A DNA stretch of 64,000 nt from Vitrella brassicaformis CCMP3155 (taxonomy: Eukaryota; Protista; Chromerida): the NCBI GenBank assembly GCA_001179505.1, contig CDMY01001019.1, forward strand, positions 1-64,000, read 5' to 3'. Below are positions 35,139-43,144 of this stretch, in pieces. The position numbers and the translations under genes were made by a program. How positions within the stretch are numbered: the stretch's first letter is position 1; each line of letters begins with the position of its first letter. A model generated the notes under the pieces. The model was not told the DNA's origin. It made no database searches and was given only the letters and a program-made list of their open reading frames with translations.

Positions 35139-38100
35139 TCACTTGCCCGCCTCTTCTGGTGCTTCGTCCCCCTGCTGTCCCTCTCCTTGGCAGCAGCGCT
35201 CTCCTGGTGGCGAATCATCAAAGTCGCCAGTATGCTGTCCCTTGTCGTCCTGCGTCTCGAACCGGACGCTCTTGCGGGTCATCGGCAGGGCGCTCGACTT
35301 GGTCCTCCCTCTCCCTTGCAGCGCATCAGAGGCCGTTGTGGTGCGGCGAACCCACAGGAGCGCCCCGGCCGTCACGAGCAGAATCAACAGCATGACGGCA
35401 CCGAAGCCAATCAGCACGTAGATGTGCAGCGGGAGGGAAGTGGCCCAAGGGTCCTCAAGTGGCCTCCCATCCACACCACCACGCGCAGGACCACCACCAC
35501 CAAGGCCGCTCTTGGTGGCTGCCTCTTCTTGGTCCTCCGCCTCCCAATAAGAGAATGACGGTGCACACGTGCGGTGGTGGTCGCAGTCAGACGAGACGGG
35601 CAGGGGGGGCGGGGAGGGCATCAACATGAATGAGAGGGAGGGGTCGACAGAGAAGGCGGTGGTCGAGCGGATGGGTGAGGACGCGTTGGCGAGGATGCTC
35701 TCCCACACAGGCAGTGAGTCCGAGTACTTGACGTTCAGCAACCTACACACACAGAGAGGATGAGGTCGGTCTGTTGTTCTGTGTGTGCATGTGGTGTTAG
35801 TTACCGGAAGAGCGCAATGACGGATCCCCTCATGACGCCGATCATCTGCACGTTGGCGGCCCTCCTGCTGACCGCTCGGCCGGATGCCCGCGCTGCGTCG
35901 AGCGCTTCATCAAACGACTCAGTGAGGGTGTGTTGCAGATCCGTCAGGAAGCCGTCAAGCTGAGTGGCATCCTGACAACAACACAGACACACACATAGAT
36001 ACGGGTGACCCCTGTGTGTGTCCATGTGTGTGTCTGTGGGTGTCTGGTGCTCACGGCCGTGATCTGGTCGTAGTCCTTTCCCAGCACTCTGACCACCAGG
36101 TAGGTGTCGTCATGCTCATGCTCGTCGGGTGTTGCTGCGCCAGCCTGGCTGCCGGCCAGCAGCACAGAGGCGTTGTTCTGCTCGCACACGAAGCGCCGCT
36201 TGGACACACAGGAAAGGGCCTTCAACCGCTCACCGCCAGCAGACCTCTGCAAACATACACACACAACACACAGACACAGGGAGAGCACCCAGGCCACAAT
36301 AAGCACACGGGAAATGGGTGAAGTCGAAATCCCGTACCTCAATGATCCCGCAGCTGCCTTGGTTGAGGCCCTTCTCATCCACATGTGGGTCGCCGTCGTG
36401 CTGCCCGTGTGTATGGCCCCCGACCCACCCCCACCCCTCCCTCTGATGTTTGCGGAGACTCACCCAGTACTCGCCGTCCTGCTCACCGCGCTCGGGCACG
36501 TGATAAGGGGCACCAGAGAAGAGCGCATCGAACGGCGAGAGGCCGTCCTGCGTGTCGAAGGCGGCCAGCTGCCCGCCCTCCCTCTCGCATTGGCTGCTCG
36601 CCTCTTCCCACGACAGGCGGCCGAACTGTAGCTTGTAGCAGGAGCCGCCGATATCCGTGTAGCCCTCTGTGCACTGCTGCTGCTGGGTGCTGCTGTGATG
36701 GGCCGCCAGCACCCGAGAGGACCTGAGCGGACAGCCATCTGGACCGGCATAGGTGCTCTACACAGAGACAGAGAAGAGACGCAGGTCGATCCGTGTGCAT
36801 GTGGTGGTGCTTTGGTATATAGGTTACCTGTATGCTGCGGACATAGGCTGGGTGCAGAGGCACCAGGGGCGGCCGTGGGCCGCCGAACAAAGAGCACGAG
36901 GGCGGCTCGAGCTCGTGGGCGACACACGACGGCTCCTCGTCACACGCCGCCTCACATAGCTCATCGGTCGGCGCCCCTCCCACCTCGGCCAAGAGGCTCC
37001 TTTGGTCGCCGTGAGATGCCATAAGCCGACAGAGGGCCGACCGCCACACAAAAGCCGCACACTTGCCGTCCTTGCCACAGGCATCGCTGCACCCTCTGCG
37101 GGACGACCATGGGCCCTCTTCGCTGCTGCTGGTGTTGCTGCTGTTGCTGGTGGAGAGGACGAGAAAGGGGCGGTGGGAGGTGTCGTCGATCGTGAAGCCC
37201 TCATTGGCGCACGTGTTGTCTGCAGACACACGGAGAGATAATGTAGCCGTCTTTGTGTGGTGACAGTACCTTTGTCTGTGTCAGCCTACCGCAGCTGCGT
37301 GGCGCCCACACGGCCGACAGGTCCTCGCGGAAGCCGCCAGCACCGCCCCACCCCTTCATCAGGCACTCGGTGGCCATGCCCTCCTCGTTAACCACCCGAT
37401 AGACCACCGAGAAACACTCAGGGCTCTGCTGGCACCGATTTTGACAAGCCGCCAGGCTCACGCCGACGAGCGCACTGCCAATGGTGGGTGCCGCGATGTC
37501 CACCGCAATGCGCCTGCACGCCACATCGGATGACAGGACGGCCGCTGGGGAGAGCTCCGGCTGCTCTGGCAACGAGTATGTCGTCGTCTGCTGCTGCTGC
37601 TGCCGCTGCTGGCAGATGAATGGGTGCTTTGTGGCGACGAGACGGCCAATGTGGTGGCCTGGGGTCACACAGGGGGGAAGAGCGGCTGTGGTCGACGCAT
37701 GGTGGCTGTCGGAGGACGGGGTCTCTTCACAGTGGCCATGGCAAGGGTGGAGGCCCCAGTGCTGTGTGGGTGGGGCGGGGCGGCCCGTTGACACTTCTTG
37801 CGGCTGCAATGCAATGCATCGGAGAAAGGAATACGAAACATACCAAAACATCCGAGAGGATTCAACTCAAGAGAGAGTGCGCTTGCCTTGATGTATGCGC
37901 AGAGAGGTCCGTCATTGTCGCCTCCGCCACGCGCTCGGGCCAGCTCGCGCATCATGGCCACCATGTCGCCTGTGAGCGTCGTGTTGTCGATCCAGCGCCA
38001 CGTCCTTGGCTCTGCAGACAGCTGCACAAACCACAGGAGCGCAATGGGCATGTCTGTATCTGTGGGTTGCTGACGTACGTCGATATGCAGGCCTATGTGG

Positions 38101-40981
38101 TAGATGGCGTCATGAGTGCCCTGGGGTGCGGGGATGTGGCAGCTGGCCGCTGAAGAACCGGAACAGAAAAACCCCAACAGAGATGACAAATCGGCCTGTA
38201 GGCACACACACACACACGATACACCCACTCCCCCGTCTCTCCCTCCCTCTCTCTACACCCACCTCGTCTCTGACGGTGGCCAGGTGCCCCCCACTCTGCT
38301 CACACACCGCCTGTGCGCCCTCCCACCCCTGCTGCTCCCACACAACACGATAGCACTCGCCGTTTCTCAACCCAAAGTAGCCATCCCGACATTGACCGCC
38401 ATCGGCATCGTCACTCTGCCCCTTGAACGCGCTCGCCGCGCTACGTGAGGGGCACGCGGCCGGCCCCGAGACGTATTTGCGGTTGAATGTTGGGTGGATG
38501 AGCTGCCTGGTGGGAGGGAGGGGCAAGGGGGGCTGCGCGTCGGTGAGGATGAGTGTGCAGGTGGGCGGCTGGTAGTGGGTGCTGGCTGCAGGTGGGCACG
38601 ACCTCGAATCGGGTGCGGGGAAAGAATGCAGCACCGTGTCGCTCTCCTGCACACAGACAAAGCACATAAGCGCAGGGTGAGACAGAGAGAGAGGGAGAGG
38701 GAGAGAGAGAGAGAGAGGGCGAGGGAGAGAGTCTCACCGCGTCTCTGGTTTGGCATTCTGGTGGGCTCCATGTGTAGCCGGTGCAGCCCTTGTTCTGCTG
38801 GCACACGAGGTGGCACGACGCCGCCCCGCCCGTCGCGTTGACCGTCGCCGTGTGGTAGTGCCGCGCGCCACGCGGCGGATGGTAGATGAACCCCTCCTCC
38901 ACACAGCTCATATCTGTACACCCACCAGACAACAGACAGCAAACACACCCATCCATCCATTCATCCACCCTCTCCCCTCTGTTCTTGCTCAAGTCGGCTC
39001 ACCGCAGCTCCTCGGCGCGGCGACCATGTGCTCGCCCCCCTGCTCAGCCACCTGAGCGTCCCACCCATACATGACGCAGGTGCCCTCCCGCCAGCCGTGC
39101 ACCACGTGGAAGCAGCCGGGCCGCCTCGCACACAGCGACTGGCACTCCTGCAGGCTGCCGACAGGTGCCGATGGGCGTGGGTGGGTGAGGACGGTGCCGT
39201 GCAGAGTGCGGCCGTTGAGACAGCAGCCGGGGGCGGGGCACACTGAAGGGGAAGATGGCGTAGGATGATTGGCCAGAGAGAGAAATATGCCTCCTTCTCT
39301 CTCTGTGTGTTGGTGTACCTGTTGGGCTGACGAGTGGTGGGGGAGGTGGGAGAGATAGCAGCTTTGTAGATGTCTCGTTCCGCCGCTTCTCGCAGATGTA
39401 CCGACGCACAACGCGGGTCGCCTTGCCTGACACACACACACACACACCATCCACAATGTGCACCCACGACTCACACATCTCATCCCGTTCTCGTTCTCGT
39501 TGATCTGGCCTTACCGGCCTTCCCATTTGCGGTGCAGTAGGGCAGATTCTGCCACTTGGGTGCGTCGATGACCTCGTGGACACACTGGTAGTGGCAGGGG
39601 GCCGTCAGCCACCCACCACTGGGCGAGCCGTCTTCGATGCTCATCGGCTGCAGACAACACCCACCACATGCAGGTGTGAATGCATGTGTGTTGGTGTGAG
39701 TGTGGGAGGGGTGGGTGACCACCTGGATAAGGGCGCATGACTCGCCCGGCTCATCTGCTGCTGTGGGCGGCGTCATCGTGACATTGGATTGGTCCATCCA
39801 CTGCCAGTGGTCTTGCTCGTCCTGACACACGAACACACGACGTCGTGTGTGTGTCCGACCACTGCCAAATGGCTCACTCGGTATAGCCCGATCCAGTATG
39901 CATTGTCGTGGAGCCCGCCGGCAGGGACGCGACACGAGCCGTCGGGACAGAACAAAGACATCACCGATGCCTGACGCGCCTGCACCACACACACACACAT
40001 GCATTCCGACATGCAGCCATTGCCATGTGTCGACATACCTCGGTGTCGACGACAGCGAGATGCCCGCCCTCCTGTCGACAGATGCTCTCGGCCTCCCTCC
40101 ACGTGGCCATCTCATAGCTGACCCGATAGCACGACGACCCTCCCACACCCACACCCACCGACACATAACCCTCACCACACACACCCTGACCACCATCAGC
40201 ACCAGGCCGCCCCTCGTCAGCCGACCGCCGGTCGGGGCACGGAGCTGGGCCTGACACGTGCTGCATCATGTGGTCGTTGAAGTAGCCGTCGACGAGGGAA
40301 ATGGGGTGTTTTCTCGACTTGAGGTGGCATGTGGGTGGCTGGTACGTGGCCTCGTCGCAGTCGGGATTGTCGTCACAGAGGTCGGTGCAGGACTGTTTGG
40401 AGGGAGAGGGAGGGGAAGAGGGGGGCGCGGTGATGTGGAGAGGCGATTGAAGGCCCTGTGGTCGACACACACATGTGTGTGGCTATGTATGAAGTCTCTC
40501 CCAGCCCAGCCACCCACCTTTTTGATGAGTTGGCACTGTGGGCCGGTCCATGTGAAGTACCGGCACCCCTCCGCCCGCTTGCACGCCCTGTCGCATCCCT
40601 CAGGCCCGTCACTGCCGTCGGACTCACCCACAGCGGCCGACGGATCGTTGGCGGCGTAGATGAAGCCGCGGTCATAACATGACTCATCTGCAAACACACG
40701 CAACCAACACAAACACACAGAACGCATCAAGATCCTTTGAATCATTGTGTCCATCACTCACCGCAGCTTCTGGGGCCGACGAGGAGGTCGGCATCTTTAT
40801 TCTCCCGAATGGTGCCGTTCCATCCCACCATGTAGCAGCTGCCCCACTCGCCATAGCCCGTATAGTGACACTGGGGCGTCCGTGCGCACGCGGCCTGGCA
40901 CTCTGACGCTTCCTTGACCGGCTCGACCAGACCCACACCGATGCCTGAGAGCTCGCCACGTCGATAACACGAAACCTCTGA

Positions 40982-41016
<35 letters not shown>

Positions 41017-42627
41017 TGAGAGGGGATGCAGAGGACACCTTTCAGGTCTCTCTGTGTCCCCGGGTCTGTACCCTCTGGCAGCTCTCTTGCGAGAGGGTAT
41101 CCACACGCCCGCTTGACAGCGCTGCGGGCAGACGTGTCGGTGCCCCTGACCGGCTTGTTGAACAAAAACCGCTTCAGCTCGCAGTTGAAAGTGACCGGCT
41201 CGCCCGTCTCATCGATGTCGTCAGTGACGCCCTCTGGGTGGTAGACGTAGGCCCCGCACGCCATGGCCTGGCTGCACATGAATTGGCACTGACGCTGGGA
41301 GAGGACGGTGTGGTGGGCCAGGCGGTGGAAAGGATTGGGCTCGTACCCCGTGGGCAGCTCGTCGAAGCACCACTCCACTGTCACGAGAGGGCGAGAGAGG
41401 GAGAGAAGGAGATGATACGCGCCTCTCTCTCTCCCTCTCTGTTTTCTGCGGGCTTAGCTTACCGCAGTGCTGTGGGCCGGAAACGATCGACGGGCCGCCC
41501 ATTTGGCGCGGCTCGCCCCCCTCCCGATGCAGCACACACTCGCCCCGTCTGCCGTCGTAGGTGAAGGCCGCGCACTCCCACCTCGTCTGGCACTCGCGCT
41601 GACACATGGCGGCCGACGCGATGCCCGTCATCGGCTGCGACACGAGATGGGGGCCTGAGTTCTCCGTGGATGGCTGGTGGCACGACGTCGGCACTGAACA
41701 AGGGGAGAGGGAGGGAGAGAGCGGATGCAGGAGAAGGTACCTTTTCGTTGTGTGTGTTGTGAGGTGTGCTTACGGGGAGGGCTCTTTTCGATGTTTTTTG
41801 TGAGGTTGATGCGGTCGAGGGTCATGTGCAGGGTGCCGTTGACGGCTCGCACGTTCTCTGGCCGGAAGAGCGCCCGGTTGACGTCAAAGGTGAAGTCCCC
41901 CCGCACCCAGTGGCCGCCATCATGCGCATCAACCACGCCCTCGAAATCGTCTCTCCAAAGCGACTGACACACACACCACAGACACACACACACACACACA
42001 CACACACGTGTCTGCGCTCGCCCCCATCTGTGTCACGAGCGTACCACAAACGCGTGTTTCTCCTGGTCGAGTCTCCACACCTCCACATAGTCGACCAGCC
42101 CCGTGACGGCCGCCCCGCCCCCGCAGTACATGCGGTTGTCGAAGGTGCCGCCCCAGAAGCGGCTGATGTGCTTGTTCATCGGCCACAGGTTCAGGTGCAG
42201 CGACAAAGGCTCCCTGAAGTGGGCCAGCAGCGCCGGGTCGGTCTCCCTGCGGACTGTCCGGTGGTCGAACAAGAAGGCCACGAAATCTGCCACACGCTCA
42301 CACGGAGAGAGAGAGAGGGGGGGGAGTGGGAGAACCGTGTGCTCGTGTGTGTTGGTGTGGGTGTGAGCGGTGCCATCCACGCACCAGGTGTCCACTCGAT
42401 GGCGATTGTGTGGAACTCCTCGCCCCATTTCTCGACGCCCCAGTCGCTGGCGTCGTGAATGCGCTGCCTGAGCGACCTCTGGGTGCTGTTGGGGTCGCTC
42501 CAGATCATGTTGGTCTGGAAGAGGCGGGCAGCCGAGCTGCTGAAGGAGAGCGTCTGCGACGAGCCGAATATCTCGATGTCCAGCTCAGACCTGACAACAC
42601 AGTCCACACAGGTCACAGATGTGTGGA

Positions 42628-42677
<50 letters not shown>

Positions 42678-43144
42678 GCGCACCATGCGGCCATCGGGTG
42701 GGTGGAGTTGGGTCTGTAGAGGAAGAAGGACATGACGGCCCCCTCGCACACAACCGGACGCACACGCACCTCGAAACGACCTGCACATATCGATAGCGAT
42801 ACACACACACAAGCTGGGCATGCTCTCTGCGTCTATGCGCGTGGTGTCCGTACCGTAATGGAACAGCTCATCGCCATCGGCAGTCACTGGGGACACCGAA
42901 GCTGCACAGACACACACACACACACACACACATAGTGATGATGATCTGAATGCCCTTCCTGCAGCCCCCCCGTGTTTATGTGTGTGTGTGTGTGTGTACC
43001 TCCGCTGAAGAGCTTCTCGCATGTGCCCGTGTTGACGTTGAAAAACATCTCCTCAGTGCCGTCGTGGATGGGGCACTGGCCCCTTACAGACGCCACAACA
43101 ACAGCAGCAGCCGCAACAAACACAAAAGATGCTCGAGGGGACAT
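35139..43144 (-). CDS. Large type I membrane protein: signal peptide - circularly permuted GH16 beta-glucanase - about 10 PAN/Apple modules interspersed with 3 C-type lectin domains - SEA-like domain - TM - cytoplasmic tail
   Basis: Leader MSPRASFVFVAAAAVVVASVRG. GH16 motifs YGRFEVRVR, WSELDIEIFG (ExDxE), EFHTIAIEWTP, HLNLW, VDYVEVW. Repeated CxxxC...C...(F/Y)x(Y/W)...C.L...SGPxxC PAN modules. CTL motifs SCYRV...TWREAESICRQEGGHLAV, ECYRV...WEGAQAVCEQSGGHLAT and SCYKL...SWEEASSQCEREGGQLA. TM HIYVLIGFGAVMLLILLVTAGALLWV followed by RR. Confidence 0.88.

What the first reader, a model, noticed from the sequence alone, without database searches (positions are those of the whole stretch)
35139..43144. 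Enzyme-lectin-adhesin mega-receptor: GH16 + about 10 PAN/Apple + 3 C-type lectins + SEA + TM
One minus-strand gene strings together a glycan-degrading domain, two classes of carbohydrate/adhesion modules and a membrane anchor. The unit PAN-PAN-CTL recurs three times: in each, the second PAN is shortened, ends around SGP(A)xC/AGPDGC and is followed by a linker and CTL, which suggests internal cassette triplication. PAN/Apple domains are known from apicomplexan microneme adhesins (TgMIC4, EtMIC5). I know of no described protein with this combination. Inference: a candidate surface system that binds, senses and trims beta-glucans (own cell wall at zoospore release/germination, or host/biofilm/fungal glucans), conceptually like beta-glucan recognition proteins.
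Basis: partly seen in the sequence, partly recalled or inferred. Interest (0 to 1): 0.85.

Follow-up and report, generated by a model that had tools for sequence, protein, structure and literature searches.

The report
Glucanase-tipped PAN/lectin surface protein
One expressed 26-exon gene of the alga Vitrella brassicaformis encodes a 2016-residue membrane-anchored surface protein with a probably active beta-glucan-cutting enzyme at its tip and a long stalk of adhesion-type modules; the domain combination has not been described in a paper, but it is built from known parts and has sister genes in the same genome.

Summary
Window 43144-35139 (minus strand) is one gene of 26 exons with a 6051-nt CDS encoding 2016 aa. 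Spliced contigs from three studies remove the predicted introns, and two of them (6.2 and 6.5 kb) span GH16 to PAN9. The model is identical to database protein CEM38970.1/A0A0G4H5A7 of Vitrella brassicaformis.

The architecture is: signal peptide; a circularly permuted, Fibrobacter-type GH16 with the E-x-D-x-E motif intact; two PAN domains; three cassettes of [full PAN + 10-Cys double half-PAN + C-type lectin-like domain]; a Cys-free juxtamembrane module; one TM helix; and a 69-aa tail.

The SEA assignment is not confirmed. The three CTLDs lack the canonical EPN/QPD-WND sugar and calcium motifs.

The same architecture recurs at contig C347, which the scan probably noted already as s1-252835. 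A shorter form, probably GPI-anchored and lacking the acid/base Glu, lies on C295. The PAN-PAN-CTLD cassette also occurs twice in a protein of the archigregarine Selenidium.

My best reading is a surface-tethered endo-beta-glucanase on a binding and spacer stalk. A receptor or sensing role is unsupported because the tails are not conserved. This is a new variant of known kinds, of moderate interest.

The parts
35139..43144 (-). Whole CDS span: 26 exons, 25 short introns of 57-98 nt that are rich in (CA)n/(GA)n. Encodes 2016 aa, equal to CEM38970.1 / A0A0G4H5A7.
   Evidence: Open joined ORF. Spliced contigs of X1, X6 and X7. Identical to P0001. Names.
43079..43144 (-). Signal peptide (aa 1-22, MSPRASFVFVAAAAVVVASVRG). 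The mature end starts QCP, which is invariant in the three paralogues.
   Evidence: Hydrophobic N-terminus. Q1-C2-P3 invariant in alignment A4. The cleavage site is inferred.
41775..43078 (-). Circularly permuted GH16 beta-glucanase domain (aa 23-309, exons 1-6).
   Evidence: Pfam GH16 54.6 bits against a cut-off of 22. Co-linear over 238 aa with Fibrobacter succinogenes 1,3-1,4-beta-glucanase structures 3axd/1mve/1zm1, E 4e-21. Native Bacillus lichenases align only with query residues 38-88 of the domain (protein aa 60-110).
42572..42586 (-). Catalytic motif E99-L-D101-I-E103 (WSELDIEIFG).
   Evidence: Aligns with WVEVDIEVLG of 3axd/1mve. Identical in the C347 paralogue. Reads EIDFAV in the C295 paralogue.
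41103..41685 (-). PAN1 (aa 313-386) and PAN2 (aa 389-478). Both are full 6-Cys modules, one exon each.
   Evidence: PAN_1 E 7.8e-8 and 2.5e-4. Cys counts. Co-linear in P0060, C347 and C270.
39389..40972 (-). Cassette 1: PAN3 (40763-40972), half-PAN 4N (40518-40682), half-PAN 5C ending SGPAPC (40237-40392), and CTLD1 (39389-40182, split over 5 exons).
   Evidence: PAN hits. Lectin_C 49.7 bits. AF2 model has pLDDT 68, and its CTLD part matches Mincle, CLEC9A and CLEC5A at TM 0.81-0.85.
37609..39242 (-). Cassette 2: PAN6 (39004-39242), half-PAN 7N (38738-38908), degenerate half-PAN 8C ending SGPAAC (38452-38604), and CTLD2 (37609-38394).
   Evidence: PAN hits for PAN6 and PAN7, none for PAN8. Lectin_C 27.9 bits. 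Aligned with the other cassettes in A2.
36181..37524 (-). Cassette 3: PAN9 (37291-37524), half-PAN 10N (37014-37214), half-PAN 11C ending AGPDGC (36731-36959), and CTLD3 (36181-36676). Three of the cassette's introns are absent here.
   Evidence: PAN hits. Lectin_C 41.7 bits. Exon table.
35619..36105 (-). Cys-free juxtamembrane module (aa 1744-1857) with the motif RG-SVIALF (35807-35827). It is SEA-like but unconfirmed.
   Evidence: No Pfam hit even at E<=10. No PDB sequence hit at E<=10. AF2 pLDDT 46.6. ESM-feature top named hit is SEA at 0.89. The module and the SGSIVALF motif are conserved in the C347 paralogue.
35349..35435 (-). Single transmembrane helix (aa 1919-1947).
   Evidence: Hydropathy scan. 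Coordinates.
35142..35348 (-). Cytoplasmic tail (69 aa). Acidic C-terminus, no Tyr or Trp, no known domain.
   Evidence: Pfam found nothing. The tail is unrelated to the basic tail of the C347 paralogue.
37804..37886 (-). GC-AG intron (donor GCAAGC) inside CTLD2.
   Evidence: Joint 37803/37887 with ends 'CT..GC' in X1, X6 and X7.

Best explanation
This is a real, expressed, single gene of Vitrella brassicaformis for a type I plasma-membrane or cell-surface glycoprotein.

The membrane-distal tip is a Fibrobacter-type circularly permuted GH16 domain that keeps the nucleophile, Asp and acid/base motif. It is therefore most likely an active endo-beta-glucanase on 1,3-1,4- or 1,3-linked glucan, or possibly a transglycosylase.

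The enzyme is carried on a disulfide-rich stalk of about 1400 residues: two PAN domains plus three [PAN + double half-PAN + CTLD] cassettes. I infer that the stalk serves as spacer and as binding modules for polysaccharide or glycoprotein. It holds the enzyme at a fixed distance from the membrane, inside or against a wall or matrix.

A Cys-free, possibly SEA-type module, one TM helix and a short unconserved tail anchor the protein.

Shown: the gene structure, its transcription as one spliced mRNA, the domain content, the catalytic motif, the paralogues, and the conservation of the cassette in Selenidium.

Inferred: enzymatic activity and substrate, the binding role of PAN and CTLD, surface localisation, and the biological target (own sporangial or cyst wall, or foreign glucans).
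For: - Single mRNA: spliced 6.2-6.5 kb contigs in X6 and X7, and spliced contigs in X1. The ORF is open through 26 exons and equals P0001.
- GH16: 54.6 bits. Co-linear with 1mve/3axd at E 4e-21, with WSELDIEIFG aligned to WVEVDIEVLG.
- Stalk: PAN_1 121 bits, with Lectin_C in three stretches. The CTLD fold is confirmed for CTLD1.
- Anchoring: signal peptide and one TM helix.
- Conserved design: the same head-to-anchor order recurs in C347, with ELDIEIFG intact, three cassettes, the same juxtamembrane module and a TM helix. It also recurs in P0060 on C295, co-linear at E 4e-94, with a hydrophobic GPI-like C-terminus, and in the short C270 gene, GH16-PAN-PAN-TM. A membrane-anchored GH16 tip is therefore conserved.
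- Unconserved tails argue against a signalling function.
Against: - No enzyme assay exists. GH16 members with intact motifs can be transglycosylases, and sequence identity to the solved lichenase is only about 30%, so the substrate is open.
- The CTLDs lack EPN/QPD and WND, and PAN specificity is unknown, so 'binding modules' is by analogy only.
- Localisation, developmental stage and the composition of the Vitrella wall are unknown to me.
Its inclusion in the same mRNA rests on contig-length arithmetic and on identity to the annotated protein.
Confidence: 0.6

Rival explanations
1. Adhesin or lectin reading. The protein mainly binds host, partner, prey or biofilm glycans, or matrix. The GH16 domain would act as one more carbohydrate-binding module, or as a transglycosylase that couples wall polymers, as in fungal Crh enzymes or plant XTH, rather than as a hydrolase.
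For: - PAN arrays and CTLDs are typical adhesion modules.
- Paralogue P0060 has lost the acid/base Glu (EIDFAV) but is otherwise conserved and probably GPI-anchored. So non-hydrolytic use of this GH16 exists in the family.
- P0060's GH16 also hits Aspergillus Crf1 and plant xyloglucanase-type structures.
- The cassette without GH16 exists in Selenidium and in Vitrella C251.
Against: - This copy and C347 keep E-x-D-x-E exactly, which suggests selection for catalysis.
- The closest solved relatives are hydrolases.
- The CTLDs lack canonical sugar-binding residues.
Confidence: 0.25
2. Signalling 'mega-receptor'. Glucan binding or cutting outside the cell is transduced through the TM helix and tail.
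For: It has type I topology, a large ligand-binding-type ectodomain and a possibly SEA-like mechanosensitive module.
Against: - The 69-aa tail has no domain.
- It has no similarity to the tail of the otherwise co-linear C347 paralogue.
- The C295 paralogue has no tail at all.
Confidence: 0.07
3. Gene-model artefact. Two or more neighbouring genes, a secreted GH16 and a PAN/CTLD membrane protein, have been fused by prediction or by contig assembly.
For: Contigs across two genes do not by themselves prove one transcript (caveat stated).
Against: - Every junction is spliced in frame with no stop over 6051 nt.
- There is no room for a second start or UTR between exons, because all introns are 57-98 nt.
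- Contigs from two studies span GH16 to PAN9.
- Three paralogues at other loci keep the same GH16-PAN order.
Confidence: 0.02

Closest known systems
Fibrobacter succinogenes 1,3-1,4-beta-D-glucanase (PDB 1MVE, 1ZM1, 3AXD), the natural circularly permuted GH16 (Tsai et al. 2003, pmid 12842475, as listed in PMC2395249)
   Same: The GH16 jelly-roll has the same permuted segment order and is co-linear over about 238 aa. The catalytic E-x-D-x-E sits in the same place.
   Different: - Identity is about 30%.
- The host is eukaryotic and the gene is intron-rich.
- An N-terminal Cys-containing extension (QCP...C) is present.
- The domain is fused to PAN/CTLD modules and a membrane anchor, not to bacterial modules.
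- The substrate has not been tested.
Vitrella paralogues: C347:110761-118300 (probably scan note s1-252835), CEM00455.1 (P0060, C295) and the C270 GH16-PAN-PAN-TM gene
   Same: All share the QCP-GH16(permuted)-PAN-PAN head. C347 has the identical overall architecture, including three cassettes, the juxtamembrane module and a TM helix.
   Different: - Identity is 28-41%.
- C347 has few introns and a basic tail.
- P0060 has one cassette, has lost the acid/base Glu, and has a GPI-like end.
- C270 has no cassette.
Selenidium pygospionis transcript proteins EP00923_P020175/6 (P0153, P0086)
   Same: They carry two copies of the same composite cassette. This comprises the half-PAN pair, SGPAPCP, CP.GY..CYRVSF..EA...C..EGGHLA, LFC..C.VP.G, and an insert-bearing CTLD ending RRYICE.
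   Different: No GH16 or TM helix was detected. Identity is 25-27%. The source is a transcriptome of a parasite, so contamination cannot be excluded by me.
Apicomplexan PAN/Apple microneme adhesins (TgMIC4, EtMIC5; recalled from knowledge, not tested here)
   Same: They are tandem PAN/Apple modules on a secreted or surface protein in the apicomplexan-chromerid lineage.
   Different: Those proteins are PAN-only arrays with no enzyme, CTLD or TM helix. I found no orthology. The tail here lacks the Tyr/Trp motifs of microneme adhesin tails (read directly from the sequence).
Mannose-receptor family and invertebrate 'mannose receptor-like' proteins (e.g. Physella acuta XP_059165951.1 with PAN + CTLDs)
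   Same: They are type I proteins with several CTLDs in a row. PAN sits next to a CTLD in the mollusc protein.
   Different: They have no GH16. The mannose-receptor family is defined by CysR and FNII domains, and Pfam finds neither here. The similarity is confined to generic CTLD motifs.
GPI- or membrane-tethered GH16 wall enzymes of fungi (Crh/Crf) and GH16-like beta-glucan recognition proteins of invertebrates
   Same: In both cases a GH16 fold operates at the cell surface. The catalytically dead paralogue P0060 parallels the recognition proteins.
   Different: Those are non-permuted GH16 subfamilies with different accessory modules. This copy keeps its catalytic residues, unlike the recognition proteins.

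Membership tests
GH16 (Pfam PF00722), Fibrobacter-type permuted subgroup | Profile match above the curated threshold | tested here: met
   54.6 bits for aa 23-310 against a cut-off of 22. 50 bits in the whole protein.
GH16 (Pfam PF00722), Fibrobacter-type permuted subgroup | Catalytic E-x-D-x(x)-E motif (nucleophile, Asp, acid/base) | tested here: met
   E99-L-D101-I-E103 aligns with EVDIE of 3axd/1mve.
GH16 (Pfam PF00722), Fibrobacter-type permuted subgroup | Permuted segment order, with the N-terminal strands of classical lichenases placed at the C-terminus | tested here: met
   Co-linear with 1mve over query residues 38-275 of the domain (protein aa 60-297). Native Bacillus enzymes align only with query residues 38-88 (protein aa 60-110), at their residues 66-116. 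The engineered permutants 1cpm/1cpn align at their residues 10-58. P0060 is co-linear with 1cpm over 53-264.
GH16 (Pfam PF00722), Fibrobacter-type permuted subgroup | Glycoside hydrolase activity and substrate | not testable with these tools
   Needs an enzyme assay.
PAN/Apple (PF00024, PF14295) | Profile match and the 6-Cys pattern | tested here: met
   PAN_1 121 bits and PAN_4 96 bits in the whole protein. Five modules have 6 Cys. Six half modules have 5, 5, 5, 3, 5 and 5 Cys, which pair up to 10, 8 and 10. PAN8 has no hit.
C-type lectin-like domain (PF00059) | Profile match for each of the three domains | tested here: met
   49.7, 27.9 and 41.7 bits against a cut-off of 22.6.
C-type lectin-like domain (PF00059) | CTLD fold | tested here: met
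   The AF2 model of cassette 1 matches Mincle 4kzw (TMt 0.81), CLEC9A 3vpp (0.85) and CLEC5A 2yhf (0.84). CTLD2 and CTLD3 were not folded.
C-type lectin-like domain (PF00059) | Ca2+-dependent sugar site (EPN/QPD plus WND) | tested here: not met
   In the DCIR alignment, the residues 'AAD' align with DCIR's own EPS motif, its counterpart of EPN. W-L-T, W-G-L or no Trp stands where WND is expected. The loop alignment is uncertain.
SEA domain (PF01390) | Profile or sequence match | tested here: not met
   No Pfam SEA hit at E<=10. No PDB chain at E<=10.
SEA domain (PF01390) | Alpha/beta sandwich fold | tested here: inconclusive
   The single-sequence AF2 model has pLDDT 46.6. Among language-model features, SEA is the top named hit at 0.89, and 9 of the 10 best family-bearing hits are SEA. 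This is below the tool's 0.9 lead threshold.
SEA domain (PF01390) | G|S-V-V-V-type autoproteolysis motif in a membrane-proximal position | tested here: inconclusive
   RG-SVIALF here and SG-SIVALF in C347, at the same place, Cys-free and next to the TM helix. Cleavage itself cannot be tested here.
Beta-glucan recognition proteins (GH16-like, non-catalytic) | Loss of catalytic residues | tested here: not met
   E-D-E is intact in this gene. It is lost only in paralogue P0060.
Mannose receptor family | CysR (ricin B) and FNII domains before the CTLD array | tested here: not met
   Pfam finds only GH16, PAN and Lectin_C.

The most novel reading that the evidence does not exclude
Chromerids would carry a family of 'enzyme-tipped adhesins': membrane- or GPI-anchored, bacterial-type permuted GH16 glucanases mounted on PAN/CTLD stalks. 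Active members (this gene, C347) and catalytically dead ones (C295 and others) would work together as cutters and binders. Their target would be a beta-glucan wall or matrix at sporangium opening or zoospore release, or a partner's glycans. Their [double-PAN + CTLD] cassette, shared with archigregarines, would be an ancestral adhesion unit of the apicomplexan lineage that was later lost or remodelled in the well-studied parasites.
Probability: 0.25. Interest if true: 0.65.

Novelty: new variant of a known kind. Interest (0 to 1): 0.45.

Why it matters
If the tip is active, this would be a rare eukaryotic example of a glycoside hydrolase permanently tethered to the cell surface on a long stalk of adhesion modules. 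That design is better known from bacterial cell-surface enzymes.

It also gives a handle on two poorly known things. One is what the chromerid wall or matrix is made of and how sporangia open. The other is which extracellular modules the free-living relatives of Apicomplexa already had. The conserved double-PAN + CTLD cassette shared with Selenidium is a concrete, testable candidate for an ancestral adhesion unit.

The family also offers a natural active versus inactive series for studying how enzymes turn into binding proteins.

On the ordinary side, every domain is of a known family, the protein is already in public databases, and chromerids are known to hold many unusual extracellular architectures (PMC4501334, Appendix 5).

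Tried and rejected
- **Raw ORF pieces.** Pfam on stop-to-stop ORF pieces missed CTLD1 and CTLD2 and gave only a weak GH16 hit, because introns split these domains. This was solved by finding the identical database protein.
- **Homologue searches.** All three homologous-protein searches returned only the query itself. They used the GH16 of P0001 within long proteins, the same domain as an isolated 288-aa query, and the GH16 of P0060. Given the word and length limits of that tool, this says little about absence.
- **Related loci.** The search for related loci found nothing with the GH16 alignment in metagenome and genome contigs. It also found nothing with the SGPAPCP-CTLD junction in metagenomes.
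- **Top CTLD hits.** The best hits of the representative search, other than Vitrella and Selenidium, are animal mannose-receptor-like proteins that share only generic CTLD motifs. I reject them as relatives of the architecture.
- **SEA.** Pfam at E<=10, PDB sequence search and single-sequence AF2 all failed to support it. The MAFFT alignments with the C347 exons (A1, A3) were misaligned and were not used for folding.
- **Cassette tree.** The tree of ten cassettes is unresolved. Only one weak split (87/91) separates the GH16-linked Vitrella cassettes from the C251 and Selenidium ones. I therefore cannot say whether the triplication pre-dates the C1019/C347 duplication.
- **Odd joints.** Examples are 37608>38841, 41442>41701 and 38217>39984 with inserted letters. 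They have 21-22-nt sides at the CAG (poly-Q) repeat or at intronic microsatellites. I treat them as repeat artefacts, not alternative splicing.
- **Own-genome search with the C-terminal 297 aa** found only itself. The C347 counterpart was seen only by reading its ORFs.
- **Literature.** Searches found no paper describing GH16 + PAN + CTLD.
Full report
**What is in the sequence**

The window has eukaryotic composition (GC 0.58-0.62). The minus strand between 43144 and 35139 shows a chain of open pieces in changing frames, separated by short (CA)n/(GA)n-rich stretches. I located 25 trusted peptide anchors. I enumerated GT-AG introns between them and scored them with a splice-site matrix trained on the unambiguous junctions. 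Three junctions stayed unresolved.

**Transcript evidence**

One search for runs listed three runs with a 0.65-0.68 share of the words. That is about what the exons alone would give. It also listed one run guessed to be RNA.

I laid X1, X5, X6 and X7 on window:37200-43199, which is 6000 letters. X6 record 14 (6492 nt) and X7 record 15 (6215 nt), from different studies, lie on the exons only. They skip the introns at 37219/37290, 37803/37887, 38021/38079, 38194/38262, 38913/39003, 39242/39319, 39647/39723, 39820/39877, 39978/40038, 40454/40517, 40687/40762, 41377/41463 and 41693/41774. X1, from a third study, shows four of the same joints.

The reads corrected five of my picks:
- the donor after 41072;
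- the donor after 40518, with the exon start at 40455;
- two introns between 39585 and 39216;
- the donors after 39878 and 39723;
- a GC-AG intron at 37804-37886.

Record coordinates add up exactly with my exon lengths between all listed pieces. The contig lengths fit the 6051-nt CDS plus about 180 nt upstream and about 260 nt downstream.

**Gene model**

The gene has 26 exons, a 6051-nt CDS and 2016 codons plus a stop. I built the joined protein only inside scripts, to check the frame. I did not send it to any search tool. Exons were searched by reference.

The exon-11 search of 1.84 billion representatives returned P0001, 2016 aa, matching at residues 618-756. P0001 is identical to my model. 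It is CEM38970.1 / UniRef100_A0A0G4H5A7, 'GH16 domain-containing protein', Vitrella brassicaformis CCMP3155. All whole-protein analyses used P0001 by id. The assembly size (72.7 Mb, 1064 contigs) fits that organism.

**Domains**

Whole-protein Pfam gives PAN_1 at 1.5e-35, Lectin_C at 5.5e-29, PAN_4 at 1.5e-27 and GH16 at 3.1e-13. Domain by domain:

| Residues | Feature |
|---|---|
| 1-22 | signal peptide |
| 23-309 | GH16 |
| 313-386 | PAN1 |
| 389-478 | PAN2 |
| 491-880 | cassette 1 |
| 904-1319 | cassette 2 |
| 1319-1326 | poly-Q |
| 1348-1718 | cassette 3 |
| 1744-1857 | Cys-free module |
| 1919-1947 | TM helix |
| 1948-2016 | cytoplasmic tail |

*GH16.* The domain aligns co-linearly (aa 60-297) with the Fibrobacter succinogenes enzyme (1mve, 1zm1, 3axd; E 4e-21). 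That enzyme is the published natural circular permutant of the family (reference B3 in PMC2395249). Native Bacillus lichenases align over only 50 residues. The catalytic WSELDIEIFG matches WVEVDIEVLG. This agrees with the scan's own note s1-218430.

*CTLDs.* The AF2 model of cassette 1 (pLDDT 68) gives a CTLD that superposes on Mincle, CLEC9A and CLEC5A at TM 0.81-0.85. The EPN/QPD and WND positions are not conserved in any of the three domains. They are therefore C-type lectin-like domains of unknown ligand.

*Juxtamembrane module.* Pfam at E<=10 and PDB sequence search give nothing, and single-sequence AF2 is unreliable. Language-model features put SEA first among named clusters at 0.89, which the tool itself rates as a lead only. 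The motif RG-SVIALF recalls the SEA cleavage site and is conserved as SG-SIVALF in the C347 paralogue. I call the module SEA-like and unconfirmed.

**The repeated cassette**

Alignment A2 shows that the unit is not simply PAN-PAN-CTL. It has these parts, in order:
- a full 6-Cys PAN ending PRSC;
- an N-part half-PAN (Cys1-5);
- a linker;
- a C-part half-PAN (Cys2'-6') ending (V/A)SGPAPCP;
- a linker;
- a CTLD with CP.GY..CYRVSF..W.EAE..C..EGGHLA, an extra LFC...C.VP.G loop, and an insert with two extra Cys before RRYICE.

The half-PAN pairs hold 10, 8 and 10 Cys. In cassette 2 the Cys3'/Cys4' pair is lost together. By parity, Cys1 of the N-part should pair with Cys6' of the C-part, which is an inference.

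Cassettes 1 and 2 share five intron positions: PRSC|D in phase 1, after the N-part, after HLA..x.E, after the WIGL strand, and after CA.I(Q/K). Cassette 3 keeps two of them. The HLA....|intron position also occurs in C347. This fits tandem duplication of a multi-exon unit. A tree of ten cassettes is unresolved (in that script I joined two C347 exon translations locally). The order of triplication and gene duplication therefore stays open.

**Relatives**

In the same genome:
- C347:110761-118300 (+) has the same architecture: GH16 at 39.5% identity with ELDIEIFG intact, PANs, three cassettes, the same juxtamembrane module, a TM helix and a basic tail. The scan's note s1-252835 probably describes it.
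- P0060 (CEM00455.1, C295, 1009 aa) is co-linear from the mature N-terminus through CTLD1 (E 4e-94). It reads EIDFAV in place of ELDIEI and ends in a hydrophobic GPI-like tail.
- C270 encodes SP-QCP-GH16(EIDVE)-PAN-PAN-TM.
- At least 15 further permuted GH16 loci exist.
- The SGPAPCP-CTLD junction occurs three times here, three times in C347, once in C295 and twice in C251, with a few weak extra hits. Only three genes join it to GH16.

Outside Vitrella, only Selenidium pygospionis (P0153, 1433 aa; P0086) shows the composite cassette. It has two copies at 25-27% identity, including the CTLD insert, and no GH16. The other hits are animal CTLD proteins.

No paper in the library describes the combination. 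The chromerid genome paper only states that chromerids have many secreted proteins with sugar-binding domains (PMC4501334, Appendix 5).

**Reading**

The conserved design is an N-terminal, membrane-distal GH16, then PAN-PAN, then optional cassettes, then an anchor (TM or GPI). The catalytic motif is intact in this gene and in C347. I read this as a surface-tethered endo-beta-glucanase, with the PAN/CTLD stalk as spacer and binding part.

The tails of the two full-length paralogues are unrelated, and the third paralogue has none. This argues against a signalling receptor. The catalytically dead paralogues suggest that some family members bind rather than cut. That keeps an adhesin, lectin or transglycosylase role open for this copy as well. 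Substrate, location and stage are not known.

**Verdict**

This is a new architecture built from known domain families, it belongs to a small Vitrella family, and the protein is already deposited but undescribed. Interest is moderate.

Noticed in passing
G000:C295 about 117900-121200 (L008; protein P0060 = CEM00455.1): Shorter paralogue with GH16-PAN1-5-CTLD. The acid/base Glu is replaced (EIDFAV), and the protein ends in a hydrophobic GPI-signal-like C-terminus. It is probably a non-hydrolytic binder.
   Followed up: partly
G000:C347:110761-118300 (L007:762-8300, + strand): Full paralogue with few introns. It has the same GH16 (ELDIEIFG), three cassettes, a juxtamembrane module with SGSIVALF, a TM helix and an unrelated basic tail. 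It is probably the scan's note s1-252835.
   Followed up: partly
G000, many contigs (C270, C491, C299, C418, C736, C466, C275, C857, C365, C788 and others): There are at least 15-20 further loci with Fibrobacter-type GH16 exons. This is a sizeable expansion of a bacterial-type permuted glucanase in a chromerid. Its origin, whether by gene transfer or not, was not examined.
   Followed up: no
P0153 / P0086 (Selenidium pygospionis transcripts GHVN01034982/3): An archigregarine protein carries two copies of the same double-half-PAN + insert-bearing CTLD cassette. The cassette is therefore older than Vitrella, unless the transcriptome is contaminated.
   Followed up: partly
window 37804-37886 (minus strand): A GC-AG intron, confirmed by spliced contigs in three runs. 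All other introns of the gene are GT-AG and 57-98 nt long, and many are filled with (CA)n or (GA)n microsatellites.
   Followed up: yes
window 37588-37611: A CAG-repeat poly-Q stretch lies between CTLD2 and PAN9. Many unrelated contigs end or join here in the read layout (loose ends at 37588-37612), which produces false joints.
   Followed up: partly
G000:C251:99064-99279 and 132012-132431 (P0151 = CEL96995.1): Cassette-bearing genes without GH16. P0151 has a half-PAN pair plus a CTLD with a very long insert. In the weak tree they group with the Selenidium cassettes.
   Followed up: no
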